DNA of 63,914 nt, the filler included, from Olpidium bornovanus S191 (taxonomy: Eukaryota > Fungi > Olpidiomycota), in assembly GCA_017911155.1 (NCBI GenBank). It is 32 parts of 32 records of this genome, joined end to end, with 100 filler letters (N's around TTAATTAATTAA, not from the genome) between each part and the next. Parts side by side here need not be neighbours in the genome. Positions count along the whole stretch, not along the records: positions 36,878 to 39,551 come from JAEFCI010004944.1; 31 more parts are not named here. The stretch is one strand, 5' to 3'. The position numbers and the translations under genes are program-made. Of this stretch, positions 36,878 through 40,759 are shown in pieces (the stretch's first letter is position 1; each line of letters opens with the position of its first letter). The notes under the pieces were generated by a model that had not been told where the DNA came from, searched no databases, and saw nothing but the letters and a program-made list of their open reading frames with translations.

Positions 36878-37849
36878 AGCATGTTTTCGAGATCTTCCTG
36901 AGCCTGCTGTTCGCTGAGTTGCAGCTGCGCGCGCAGTCCCTCCATCATCGTCACGTCTACGCCGTTAATGAGAAACCCGTTGAAGCCGTTGCCCTCGACA
37001 GCGACCACCGTAAGGGCTACCGAGCAAAGTGTTTCGTCGTGCACGCGAAGATACCAATGAGTGGAAGGGCTGAATCGTCCAGATGCGAGCGCTCCGAGGA
37101 ACGTCTCCGGATTAAAAATGTCATTAATGCCGTTCACGGCTTCTATTAATTGTTTCTGATCAAAAATGTCGATGACGCTGCCATATCTCTCCGTATCGGC
37201 GTTGGCGGGCCAAAACCTTTGCTTTGCCAGTTTGTTCGCAACTCGTATCTCGCCATCCCTTGTTGTCCCAATGATGAAGTGAGGCGTGTGATCCAGTATC
37301 GCCGACCGAAAGGACGTTGCGGCTTCCAGCTTCCGTTCCGTTTCCCACTGGCCATAAAGCGCTTTCAGGAGTTCCGGAATGATGTACCTGACAATGGAAA
37401 GCAAAAGGTTACCTGCTGGTTTTGGCGTACAACGTCGTTCCCTGCAGCCTTTTTGCGTACCATACTCCCAAGGCAGCTGCCACCGAAACTACCGCGGTAA
37501 ACGCCCTGAGAGCAGCGAGTGCACGCAGCGAGCCGTCGTGATGGGCATTCAAGATGTGTCCTACCCCGCACAGCGAGATAAATGCAGCGAACAACACGGC
37601 AACAGCCTGGTGCTTTGCGTTCGCCGAAGGTGCACGTCGCCCGTAGTAAAGAATTTCAAGGGGAATTGCAAGGTAGCTTACGCCGATTGTGATATCGAAG
37701 GTTCGCAGCCAGTCTACCGCTGGCGGAGCGTGATCCCCGGAGCCAAGGGCATCGGGCGCGATCTCAGCAAGAGCGCCGCCGACCCGCGGGAGGGTGAGGC
37801 AGACGGCTGCCCATAGGCCAATACGGAGAAAGCAGGCGGAAGAAGGCAT
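36878..37849 (-). CDS. Ethylene-receptor-like sensor: N-terminal hydrophobic leader, ETR1-type ethylene-binding TM domain, PAS domain and coiled coil (probable hybrid histidine kinase, 3' partial)
   Basis: Exon 37849-37461, intron 37460-37388 (GTACGC...CAG), exon 37387 to the contig end. FDITIGVSYLAIPLEILYY, LFAAFISLCGVGHILN and FTAVVSVAAALGVW|YIIPELL align to ETR1 TM1-3. They are followed by ILDHTPHFIIGTTRDGEIRVANK...FLINGVDVT (PAS). Confidence 0.88.
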
Positions 37850-38369
37850 CGATGGCGGCTTCAGGAAACGGCGGTAATGCTGAGAATCGGCGTCAGCGCG
37901 AGGTTGTGTTCCGGGGGTCTTTTTCTCCCCCCTCCTTTTTTGATCTTTTCGCATGGCAGACCATGTGACAGCGTGCGTCGTCGGGCTGCCTGGCTACTTG
38001 CTTTGCGTCTCGCCATTGAGACTGCTTTGACGGACGTGAAACGCGGATCTACAAAGAACAGAGAAACGCGTAGCCGGTAAGAACGGCTGCCAATAGGCTG
38101 CTTGCTGGACAGGACGCCCATTCGATTCTCATTACTAGTCCAAGGCAGAGAGAACCGGGACCCGTGTCTACCGGCTGCTCCTGTCCCGCGATCCGGCAGC
38201 CCCCCCCGGGAAAAATACTCAGGTTTTCGGAGGATTTCGAACTCAAAAAAAGGCAATGGAAAACCCCCCGGCCAATATCCCCCCCCCCCGCCGTCCCTCC
38301 CCCCCCTCCCCTCCACCACGGCCGCCGCATCCTTGGCCTTCCCTGATGAGCTCTGAATTCCGGCAGTCA

Positions 38370-39447
38370 ATGGCCTTCAACACAACACAGGCGTCGACGG
38401 ACACTCGCCTGCAGTCGAGGACCGAAACGCCCGCGCAACTTGGCTCCTTGTCCGTGTCGCCAGCAGAACCCCGCGATGCCGACGGCCGAGCACCGCCCGA
38501 ACGTGGACGTAGGGCACGGGCAAGAGCCGTTCGTCAAGCCGATGATTCGACCGTGACACTCCACAGTTACCTGCGTGCTGGCATGGACGGTGAGTATATG
38601 GCATAGAGCCATCTTAATTACGCCTTCATTGCGATGTGGCCTGCCGTCGGCTCTTTTGGTGGTGCTCTTGGCGGCCTGTAGAATCACGCCATGTCACTTA
38701 CAACGGCGGTTGCTGATTTCCATGTCTCGTGCCAATTTGGCAGCGGCCGCCGTTTCACAGTTCGCAAATCCTGCTGCGCGTCCGCCGCCAGTAATAATGT
38801 TTGGAAGTCAAACGAATCGTAGCATGGGCGGCACAATAAACGTCCAGCTGGCGACGGCGCAGGCAGGACCAGCGGGCTCGACGGTAGGCTCTACCATCCA
38901 TCAAAACGGCACCGCCGCCAATGCCCTCTCTGCAGGCGCGAGGACCAACGGACCCGGAACCTTAAACACAACGACCATGCCGCCGAATCTGGGCTACCGT
39001 GGCGTCCATGGGCAACTCAGTCTCGCTCACACGTCACTCACGAGCAGCTACGCAAGAGCAAGGGTCAATCCCGCGCAGACGACTTCCGGGAGCTCGTTTA
39101 ATCCCACCAGCCACGTCCGCGCCATCGTCGCTGGCGCCGCAAACGCCCTTGGGTTCGGGTTTGGATCTGGATCTCCGTTTTCGCCCCGCTCGCCTGTGTC
39201 GCCTTCCGGCCCAATCCCGCCGGCTAATGGCGGCAGCGGAGGAGCCGTTCGAATTCTAGGCCCAAGAGGTCCCGCTTCTGCGTATGGTGACGACTCTGAG
39301 GACGCATTCATCTCTTTCTCCAATAGGGACTCCGGCGGAGAACGGAATCCCGAGGTGCGCAGGATGCCGCATCAATTCCGGTCCAAATCTGTGTGCAAAC
39401 TGGACTGCAGATTTTGCGGCCGCGTAGTTTGCATGCGAGGGATGAAA
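38370..39447 (+). CDS. FAM72: FAM72-family protein with a long disordered N-terminus (3' partial)
   Basis: FRSKSVCKLDCRFCGRVVCMRGMK followed by GTAAGC matches the FAM72 N-terminal CxxC...RGMK motif. Confidence 0.75.
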
Positions 39448-40759
39448 GTAAGCGTCACGTATAATAGGTTTCTCGTTTTTGGTGCTTTGAACGAGGCAAC
39501 AGGCGCCATAAGCAAACCCCTTCCCGCACACATTCTGACTTCCGATCCATANNNNNNNNNNNNNNNNNNNNNNNNNNNNNNNNNNNNNNNNNNNNTTAAT
39601 TAATTAANNNNNNNNNNNNNNNNNNNNNNNNNNNNNNNNNNNNNNNNNNNNCATGCCCCACTCCTCCGCCTGCCGTGCTGACGCGACTTCCTGATTCAGC
39701 AGCAGCAGTCAAGCGAGCTCGCGCTGATCCTCAGGAAATCAACCGTTCGTTTTGAGTTGCGCCAGATTCCGTTGCTTCCAGCGCAGTTTCAGGCGGGGCA
39801 ACGCCATATCCGCAAGAATGCGATAGGCGCCCGGCATCCGCTACTTAGAAAGGATATGGTAGTGGTCCACCTTTGCAGCGGAGTCGTGCCAGGAACCCGG
39901 CACTTTTGAGAGCTGCTGAGATGATCGTTCCGTCTGGTGCAATCACCAGGACATTACCGCTCGGTGAGAGGCACAAAAGCAAGGTAGCGCCTCTTCAGGG
40001 TACCGGCGCAGGCGACGTGTGTTGCGAGTGCGGCGGCTCAAGACGCCAAGCACCGCGAGAATAATGATCAGACGTTTGCCATATTGTCGGGTCTCGGGGC
40101 TCGTGCGAGGTCTTAAACAGCGAGGCGCAATTTTAATTGTTAGTGACGGGAAGGCGAGTGCGCAGCTTGGTGATTGCGCGGCTGCGGGGAAACGTGCACG
40201 TGTGGCGGTGAAACGTCTTCTGCTTCTGTAAACTGCACGGGAAAACGGAATATACGCTCTTGTCCACAAAAACTTCCTCTTTTGGATTCTCGGCTGCGGG
40301 AAGGCGTTCAATCAACGTAAAGCAAGCGGTCGCGCCCCTTCGGAAGTTTTTCCCCGCTTATAACTCAGTTGGTAGTGGCGCGCGACTCTAGGGGAACTCT
40401 GCCGTCGCACGGTCCCTGGCTCGCATCTGGGAGAGTGGAGAAAACAAACCGCCCCGCTGTTTATTTTTGTGCGTATGTGCGGCAGGCAGCCGCTCCGTCC
40501 TTTTTTTTTTTTTTTTTTTTTTTGAGGAGTGAAGGGGTAGATACGTTCCCCGCAATGTCAGAAAAAGCCCCTTCGGCTTGGCAACCCAAAAAAAGCACGC
40601 TGCGGCTCAGCGTGATCTAGATAAAGAAAACTGTTTGGTGCCGGATAAATTTCAAATCACACGCATGGATCCAGACGAGCCGTTCTGATTGGGTATGTTC
40701 GTGACTTCGAAGGTATCAACGTTCCTCCTGTCCCATCTTTGCGGCAATATTCATTTCCT

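What the first reader, a model, noticed from the sequence alone, without database searches (positions are those of the whole stretch)
36878..37849. Ethylene-receptor-type sensor with an intact copper/ethylene site fused to PAS
The three TM helices align without gaps at the key positions to Arabidopsis ETR1: D25, Y32, I35, P36, I62, C65 and H69 equivalents are all present (D-ITIGVS-Y-LA-IP; F-I-SL-C-GVG-H), and splicing yields GVWYIIPELL versus LVHIIPDLL. Unlike plant receptors, which carry GAF next, a PAS domain and a coiled coil follow, and there is an extra N-terminal hydrophobic segment as in subfamily II. Such homologues are known in some early-diverging fungi but are functionally little studied. 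Here it implies a fungus able to sense the plant hormone ethylene, or a related gas, through a two-component system, which is relevant to host finding by zoospores.
Basis: partly seen in the sequence, partly recalled or inferred. Interest (0 to 1): 0.85.

Follow-up and report, generated by a model that had tools for sequence, protein, structure and literature searches.

The report
Fungal-type ethylene-receptor-like sensor gene (5' part)
The piece holds the expressed, spliced 5' part of a membrane sensor whose ethylene/copper-binding domain is intact and is followed by a PAS domain; receptors of this kind were already described in early-diverging fungi, so this is a new member of a known class.

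Summary
On the minus strand, exon 1 (37849..37461) encodes a hydrophobic leader and a three-helix ethylene-binding domain (EBD): Pfam ETR1_N, E 2e-15. Exon 2 (37387..36878, cut by the piece's edge) folds as a PAS domain flanked by long helices.

All seven residues needed for ethylene binding in ETR1 are present (D52, Y59, I62, P63, I91, C94, H98 of the spliced protein). So are all 13 columns conserved at 90% or more among 95 EBDs. The predicted fold matches plant ethylene receptors only.

The nearest relative is a protein of the zoosporic root parasite Olpidium bornovanus (53%/43% identity). Next come a metagenome protein (EBD-PAS-PAS-HisKA) and a chytrid group that resembles Spizellomyces SPPG_07928.

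EBD followed by PAS is not unusual: at least 22 of the 93 nearest EBD proteins carry PAS and 3 carry GAF. Fungal homologues were published in 2017-2019. Two second-shell positions differ across the whole fungal clade (K91 to R, T68 to G).

Kinase and receiver domains lie beyond the piece and were not seen. Ethylene binding is inferred, not shown.

The parts
37461..37849 (-). Exon 1: start codon, N-terminal hydrophobic segment (residues about 7-25, signal peptide or extra TM helix) and the three TM helices of the ethylene-binding domain up to G128-V129 and the first two bases of W130
   Evidence: Pfam ETR1_N E 2.2e-15; AF2 pLDDT 82.5 with helices 44-72, 78-102, 108-128; top 26 Foldseek Swiss-Prot matches are plant ethylene receptors; hydropathy
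37388..37460 (-). Intron 1, 73 nt, GT..AG, phase 2, inside TM helix 3
   Evidence: Skipped exactly in RNA-run contigs of X1, X2 and X3; sequence. Absent at this site in the Olpidium bornovanus orthologue
36878..37387 (-). Exon 2 (cut by the piece's edge): end of TM3 (YIIPELL), helical linker, PAS domain, and a C-terminal helix (possible coiled-coil linker)
   Evidence: AF2 pLDDT 76 with beta2-alpha4-beta3 PAS topology between helices 4-33 and 146-168; Foldseek PDB matches listed (best 50) are all PAS/LOV/FixL-type entries, probability about 1.0; profile hit to the WalK PAS domain E 0.024; ESM Atlas neighbours are PAS families; RNA contigs run 375-426 nt beyond 36878
37850..38138 (-). 5' leader covered by RNA contigs; holds an in-frame ATG at 37954 (would add 35 basic residues) and four out-of-frame upstream ATGs
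   Evidence: RNA contigs reach 37992 (X2), 38049 (X3) and 38138 (X1); ATG list
37561..37681 (-). Optional 121-nt GTAAGC..TAG intron inside exon 1; its removal deletes the end of TM1 through the Cys of TM2 and shifts the frame to a stop
   Evidence: 59-nt RNA contigs in X1 and X3 join 37682 to 37560; unspliced contigs coexist; not seen in X2; translation
38321..39448 (+). Divergent neighbour gene: exon 38321-38588, 154-nt GT..AG intron, exon 38743-39448, then another donor; the C-terminal end begins a FAM72/YPEH2ZP zinc-finger domain
   Evidence: RNA contigs in X1 and X5; Pfam PF14976 E 1.6e-4, profile positions 3-27 only because the piece ends; spliced frame

Best explanation
This is the 5' part of a eukaryotic, most likely zoosporic-fungal, ethylene-receptor-like sensor. 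Shown: a leader or extra TM segment puts the N-terminus outside the cytosol, and three TM helices form an ETR1-type pocket with the Cu(I) ligands Cys94 and His98 on helix 2 and Asp52 on helix 1. Helix 3 carries Arg115 at the place of ETR1 Lys91 and runs on as a long helix into a cytoplasmic PAS domain. A second long helix follows. The gene is transcribed and its 73-nt intron is removed. Inferred: by analogy with ETR1, SynEtr1 and AzoEtr1, one Cu(I) per monomer binds ethylene or a similar small unsaturated gas. The Asp-Arg bridge would pass the change to helix 3, and the helical linker and PAS would relay it to a second PAS and a hybrid histidine kinase (HisKA-HATPase-REC) encoded beyond the piece, as in its relatives. 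I put about 0.85 on the identity, about 0.75 on a kinase output and about 0.55 on ethylene as the physiological ligand.
For: Pfam ETR1_N E 2.2e-15. All seven ETR1 residues required for binding, and all 13 family columns conserved at 90% or more, are kept. AF2 model pLDDT 82.5; Foldseek top 26 are plant ethylene receptors, about 88 residues at rmsd 1.6-1.9 A and 30-33% identity. PAS fold. Splice and expression in three RNA runs. Orthologue in Olpidium bornovanus, 53%/43% identity, sister in the tree at 99/84 support. Relatives in the same clade carry EBD-PAS-PAS-HisKA (P0003) or EBD-PAS-HisKA-HATPase-REC (P0010, P0017). ETR1 K91R still binds ethylene at 63% of wild type (PMC10266040). Ethylene binding has been shown for bacterial EBD proteins (PMC11819568, PMC6682694; abstracts).
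Against: No kinase, ATPase or receiver domain lies inside the piece, and I could not fetch the continuing DNA or protein. I found no report of a fungal EBD assayed for ethylene binding. The T68 equivalent is Gly and the K91 equivalent is Arg throughout the clade; in ETR1, K91R gave ethylene hyposensitivity in planta. The Cys4/Cys6 pair of ETR1 has no counterpart between the leader and TM1. The organism's name is hidden, so 'fungus' rests on the nearest relatives only.
Confidence: 0.8

Rival explanations
1. The domain is a true EBD homologue, but its physiological signal is not plant ethylene. It could be copper or redox state, another small unsaturated or sulphur volatile, or self-made ethylene. 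Alternatively the TM domain could act as a cation-permeable pore, as recently reported for plant receptors.
For: Clade-wide T68G and K91R changes next to the Cu site. K91R lowers sensitivity in ETR1, and a Cu(I)-dependent olfactory receptor for organosulphur odorants has a similar Asp arrangement (PMC10266040). Reports of Ca2+ permeability of ethylene receptors (PMC13261662 and bioRxiv 10.1101/2025.10.20.683334, abstracts). I found no report of a fungal EBD assayed.
Against: Every residue known to be required for ethylene binding is kept. Among the EBD proteins named in the papers read here as tested (Arabidopsis, tomato, Synechocystis, Azospirillum), all bound ethylene.
Confidence: 0.25
2. 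The gene is a truncated or decaying receptor that lacks a working kinase output, like the Conidiobolus and Basidiobolus homologues. It would act, if at all, through partners rather than phosphorelay.
For: Truncated fungal ethylene-receptor homologues are described (PMC5285503). The downstream domains are unseen. A nonproductive 121-nt splice form exists.
Against: The transcript continues at least 426 nt past the piece's edge in one contig. The reading frame is open to the edge. The two closest relatives run on into a second PAS, and P0003 into HisKA.
Confidence: 0.12
3. The contig is bacterial or plant contamination rather than part of the host genome.
For: EBD-PAS histidine kinases are common in bacteria. 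The piece is short and also occurs in soil and rhizosphere metagenomes.
Against: Two GT..AG spliceosomal introns (73 and 154 nt) are removed in RNA contigs, and a third donor lies at 39449. The neighbour is a FAM72-like eukaryotic gene. The nearest relatives are fungal, not plant. PAS stands where plants have GAF.
Confidence: 0.02

Closest known systems
Olpidium bornovanus hypothetical protein BJ554DRAFT_2174 (KAG5457737.1, partial; P0001)
   Same: Same layout: EBD, helical linker, PAS, then the start of a second PAS. 53% identity over exon 1 and 43% over exon 2. Sister in the EBD tree at 99/84 support. Also has R at the K91 site and G at the T68 site.
   Different: No intron at the VW|YI site; residues 211-578 of the model, which include the EBD and PAS, lie on one exon. 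GC is 66% against 58%. The annotated 210-residue G/K-rich N-terminus looks like a gene-model artefact. Uncharacterised.
Early-diverging-fungal ethylene receptor homologues (fungal HK group XVIII; e.g. Spizellomyces SPPG_07928, Rhizophagus RiHHK6, Catenaria CaHHK1; Herivaux 2017, Kabbara 2019)
   Same: Three-helix EBD with all seven binding residues. The database proteins P0002/P0010/P0017, which by eye resemble the SPPG_07928 sequence printed in Text S1, have EBD-PAS-HisKA-HATPase-REC and fall in the same 8-member clade at 96/87 support.
   Different: The window's peptides are not in the compiled sequences of Text S1. Its PAS is of another type (TPHF motif), and relatives carry two PAS domains. 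RiHHK6, GpHHK2 and CaHHK1 have other N-termini. The kinase part is unseen here.
Arabidopsis ETR1 and subfamily II receptors (ETR2, EIN4, ERS2; rice ETR2/ETR4)
   Same: EBD fold and the D25/Y32/I35/P36/I62/C65/H69 residues, and IIP(D/E)LL at the end of TM3. The extra N-terminal hydrophobic segment aligns with subfamily II receptors in Foldseek.
   Different: PAS instead of GAF after the EBD. No Cys4/Cys6 pair. K91 is R, T68 is G, T101 is A. The two loops differ in length (+2, -5).
Bacterial EBD-PAS histidine kinases (e.g. Lacunimicrobium album WP_459557770.1, Cerasicoccus frondis WP_309382760.1). SynEtr1 and AzoEtr1 are the tested bacterial EBD proteins; their domain order was not checked here
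   Same: For the two named kinases: EBD directly followed by PAS domains and a histidine kinase, with or without REC. Ethylene binding and responses were shown for SynEtr1 and AzoEtr1.
   Different: Prokaryotic and without introns. They sit on the other side of the EBD tree and mostly have K at the K91 site.

Membership tests
Ethylene-binding domain family (Pfam ETR1_N, PF25487) | Profile match above the curated threshold | tested here: met
   57.1 bits against a cut-off of 27, E 2.2e-15, on exon 1 alone
Ethylene-binding domain family (Pfam ETR1_N, PF25487) | Three transmembrane helices with the ETR1 fold | tested here: met
   AF2 helices 44-72, 78-102 and 108-128, pLDDT above 90 there; Foldseek finds plant receptors only, rmsd 1.6-2.8 A
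Ethylene-binding domain family (Pfam ETR1_N, PF25487) | Cu(I) ligands Cys65 and His69 one turn apart on helix 2, and Asp25 on helix 1 | tested here: met
   C94, H98 and D52; these columns are 95/95, 94/95 and 92/95 conserved
Ethylene-binding domain family (Pfam ETR1_N, PF25487) | The seven residues required for ethylene binding (Wang 2006, as cited in PMC6944256 and PMC5285503) | tested here: met
   D52, Y59, I62, P63, I91, C94, H98, counted against AtETR1 from Text S1. The identity of the seven residues is from my own knowledge; the Wang 2006 paper could not be read.
Ethylene-binding domain family (Pfam ETR1_N, PF25487) | Basic residue on helix 3 pairing with Asp25 (Lys91) | tested here: met
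   Arg115; basic but not Lys. R occurs in 12 of 95 sequences, including all 8 of the fungal clade
Ethylene-binding domain family (Pfam ETR1_N, PF25487) | Saturable Cu-dependent ethylene binding | not testable with these tools
   Needs 14C-ethylene binding on the expressed protein
Plant ETR1-type ethylene receptors (EBD-GAF-HK(-REC)) | GAF domain after the EBD | tested here: not met
   A PAS fold follows; no GAF hit
Plant ETR1-type ethylene receptors (EBD-GAF-HK(-REC)) | N-terminal Cys pair for a disulphide-linked dimer | tested here: not met
   No Cys between residue 18 and TM1 (translation)
Fungal ethylene-receptor-like hybrid histidine kinases (group XVIII) | HisKA, HATPase_c and REC domains | not testable with these tools
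   They lie beyond 36878 and the continuation could not be fetched. They are present in clade relatives
Fungal ethylene-receptor-like hybrid histidine kinases (group XVIII) | Fungal origin | tested here: inconclusive
   The only named member of its 8-member clade is Olpidium bornovanus; the rest of that clade is unnamed, and part of it resembles Spizellomyces SPPG_07928. A Gaertneriomyces protein is among the top EBD hits but was not in the tree. The organism label is coded

The most novel reading that the evidence does not exclude
The window, Olpidium bornovanus and one uncultured soil or water eukaryote would define a separate EBD-PAS-PAS receptor lineage of root-associated zoosporic fungi. 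Its clade-wide K91R and T68G changes would retune the copper site for lower sensitivity or for another volatile. A regulated 121-nt splice that deletes the Cys/His helix would set the receptor dose. This would be a fungal gas sense used in finding roots.
Probability: 0.12. Interest if true: 0.6.

Novelty: new member of a known kind. Interest (0 to 1): 0.3.

Why it matters
It adds an expressed, correctly spliced member to the small set of ethylene-receptor-like genes in zoosporic fungi, and its closest relative comes from a plant-root parasite. I found no report of a fungal ethylene-binding domain tested for ligand binding. This short N-terminal part (about 150 residues) is a ready construct for the standard yeast 14C-ethylene assay. 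The natural K91R/T68G pair bears on current models of how ETR1 tunes affinity and signal output. It does not change the published picture that such receptors occur outside plants.

Tried and rejected
**Finding the rest of the gene**
- Exact-product look-ups of the 181-aa and 146-aa exon-1 ORFs found nothing.
- A scan of JGI metagenome contigs used patterns that include the window's own peptides. It matched 116 stretches, and none was confirmed.
- A word-index protein search with the Olpidium protein found only that protein.
- A search with a four-row profile that included both window exons found only P0001 and P0003 as close relatives. It did not find the window's own product.
- RNA contigs run 375-426 nt past the edge, but their letters are not given.
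- Raw-read RNA runs X21 and X24 laid no reads, and DNA run X7 laid no contig.

**Other checks that gave nothing**
- A sequence search of exon 1 against PDB gave no hit.
- The Wang 2006 paper is not held.
- The window's peptides are absent from Text S1 of Herivaux 2017. Kabbara 2019 has no supplement held as text.

**Rejected readings**
- A 25-nt intron using the downstream GTAACC donor is too short and is contradicted by the RNA.
- Acanthamoeba was considered because its ETR homologues are published and its GC content, as I recall it, is close to the piece's 58%. No amoebozoan protein appeared among the named relatives, but most near hits are unnamed and the A. castellanii proteins were never compared directly, so this reading is unlikely rather than excluded.

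Full report
**What is in the sequence**

The piece (36878-39551, 57.7% GC) carries two divergent genes. On the minus strand an open frame starts at ATG 37849. An in-frame ATG at 37954 would add 35 basic residues, and four out-of-frame ATGs lie further up the leader. The frame runs to 37461. A 73-nt intron with GT..AG ends follows (37460..37388, phase 2), and the frame resumes at 37387 and stays open to the piece's edge at 36878. The spliced product inside the piece is 299 residues.

**Transcript evidence**

- Contigs of three RNA runs (X1, X2, X3; three samples of one study) skip exactly these 73 nt.
- In X2 one 1417-nt contig covers 37992 through exon 1, the joint and exon 2, and runs 375 nt past the edge. 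In X1 the contig runs 426 nt past the edge.
- The RNA runs differ from the window at two places. 37673 is synonymous in Tyr59, and 37837 changes Ala5 to Pro. This suggests another strain.
- A second joint removes 121 nt (37681..37561, GTAAGC..TAG). It appears in 59-nt contigs of X1 and X3 beside unspliced contigs. It would delete the end of TM1 through the Cys of TM2 and run into a stop. I read it as a minor nonproductive form, on thin evidence.

**The ethylene-binding domain**

- Exon 1 alone matches Pfam ETR1_N at E 2.2e-15 (57 bits, cut-off 27) without net indel.
- A HMMER search of 1.84 billion representative proteins gave 93 hits at E 0.001 or better, and 90 of them carry ETR1_N.
- In an alignment of 95 EBDs, every column conserved at 90% or more is kept in the window: D52, Y59, I62, P63, F87, F90, I91, C94, G95, H98, T118, A119, S122.
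- I counted positions against the AtETR1 sequence printed in Text S1 of Herivaux et al. 2017. The seven residues described as required for ethylene binding (PMC6944256) are D25, Y32, I35, P36, I62, C65 and H69. That list is from my own knowledge, because the Wang 2006 paper was not held. They fall on D52, Y59, I62, P63, I91, C94 and H98, with identical spacing within each helix.
- The TM1-TM2 loop is 2 residues longer than in ETR1, and the TM2-TM3 loop is 5 shorter.
- An AF2 model built from 58 sequences has pLDDT 82.5, above 90 in the three helices. Its 26 best Swiss-Prot AlphaFold matches are all plant ethylene receptors. For ETR1-type entries about 88 residues align at rmsd 1.6-1.9 A and 30-33% identity.
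- The matches that also cover the N-terminal helix 7-19 are subfamily II receptors (rice ETR2/ETR4, EIN4, ERS2, ETR2).
- That segment has moderate hydropathy and ends in ...GGALA/E. It could be a cleaved signal peptide or, if translation starts at 37954, a signal anchor. Either gives the ETR1 topology.

**Where the site departs from ETR1**

- The K91 equivalent is Arg115, the T68 equivalent is Gly97 and the T101 equivalent is Ala125.
- Arg at K91 and Gly at T68 occur in all eight members of the window's clade.
- In ETR1, K91R keeps 63% of ethylene binding but gives hyposensitivity in planta. T68 lies 2.7 A from copper in the published dimer model (PMC10266040).
- There is no Cys between the leader and TM1, so the Cys4/Cys6 disulphide of ETR1 has no counterpart.

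**The PAS domain**

- Pfam gave only a marginal PAS hit for exon 2 (E 0.18).
- A three-row alignment with the two orthologues gave an AF2 model (pLDDT 76). It shows a long helix (4-33, continuing TM3), a beta2-alpha4-beta3 core, and a final helix 146-168.
- The Foldseek matches listed against PDB (the best 50) are all PAS/LOV/FixL-type entries at probability about 1.0.
- A profile search of PDB sequences found the WalK PAS domain weakly (E 0.024). ESM Atlas neighbours are PAS families.
- I saw no LOV-type Cys motif and cannot name a cofactor.

**Relatives and layout**

- The best hit is a partial protein of Olpidium bornovanus (KAG5457737.1). It is 53% identical over exon 1 and 43% over exon 2, and it continues into a second PAS.
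- Its gene has no intron at the window's site, and its annotated N-terminal 210 residues look spurious.
- Next is an intron-free ORF on an ENA metagenome contig (P0003, 42% GC) with EBD-PAS-PAS-HisKA.
- Then comes a group (P0002, P0010, P0017, P0029) with EBD-PAS_3-HisKA-HATPase-REC. By eye its sequences resemble Spizellomyces SPPG_07928 as printed in Text S1.
- An IQ-TREE of 95 EBDs puts the window with Olpidium (99/84) inside this 8-member clade (96/87), apart from the named bacterial and Closterium sequences. The domain is short and many forks are unresolved.
- A Gaertneriomyces (chytrid) protein is also among the top hits.
- Among the 93 nearest EBD proteins, PAS families occur in at least 22 and GAF in 3. 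So PAS after the EBD is ordinary outside plants.

**What could not be done**

- The window's own product is not in the protein collections, and its exon-2 peptides are not in the JGI metagenome contigs. The kinase and receiver domains are therefore inferred from relatives.
- The organism's name is coded. The piece also occurs in soil and rhizosphere metagenome runs.

**Comparison with what is known**

- Ethylene-receptor homologues with all binding residues were reported in Rhizophagus, Conidiobolus, Catenaria, Gonapodya, Basidiobolus, Spizellomyces, Allomyces and Rozella (PMC5285503).
- Ethylene binding or ethylene responses have been shown for plant, cyanobacterial and Azospirillum proteins. 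I found no such test for a fungal one.
- The window is thus a new member of a known kind, in a sparsely sampled sub-lineage (three sequences found) with two clade-specific second-shell changes.

**Neighbour gene**

On the plus strand, RNA contigs define exons 38321-38588 and 38743-39448, a 154-nt GT..AG intron, and a further donor at 39449. The last 25 residues in the piece begin a FAM72/YPEH2ZP domain (PF14976, E 1.6e-4, below threshold because it is cut).

**Verdict**

Interest 0.3.

Noticed in passing
window 37561-37681 (minus strand): A 121-nt GTAAGC..TAG segment inside exon 1 is skipped in short (59-nt) RNA contigs of runs X1 and X3 beside unspliced contigs. The product would lose the Cys/His helix and stop early.
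   Followed up: partly
window 37850-38138 (minus strand): The 5' leader covered by RNA holds four out-of-frame upstream ATGs (38132, 38121, 38016, 37964) and an in-frame ATG at 37954, so the true start and possible uORF control are open.
   Followed up: partly
window 38139-38320: A short divergent intergenic region between the two transcribed genes carries long C runs and C-rich repeats (38277-38320 is skipped as a repeat by read laying). It is probably a shared bidirectional promoter.
   Followed up: no
window 37673 and 37837: The RNA runs differ from the window at two places: G>A, synonymous in Tyr59, and C>G, Ala5 to Pro in the leader. This suggests the RNA comes from another strain or allele.
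   Followed up: partly
L001 389-1375 (Olpidium bornovanus JAEFCI010009557.1): The first 210 residues of the annotated Olpidium protein are G/K/R-rich low-complexity sequence joined by two predicted introns. This is probably a gene-model artefact, and the real protein likely starts near residue 215.
   Followed up: partly
EBD alignment, column of ETR1 K91 and column of T68: All eight members of the fungal clade have Arg at the K91 site and Gly at the T68 site, whereas 73 of 95 sequences have K and 63 of 95 have T. This is a natural K91R/T68G pair.
   Followed up: partly
L002 2-595 and 2302-2391 (ENA contig k141_305243): The metagenome relative P0003 is one uninterrupted 550-codon ORF that ends inside the kinase region, and another short ORF follows 60 nt later. 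This may be an intron or an assembly break in an AT-rich eukaryote.
   Followed up: no
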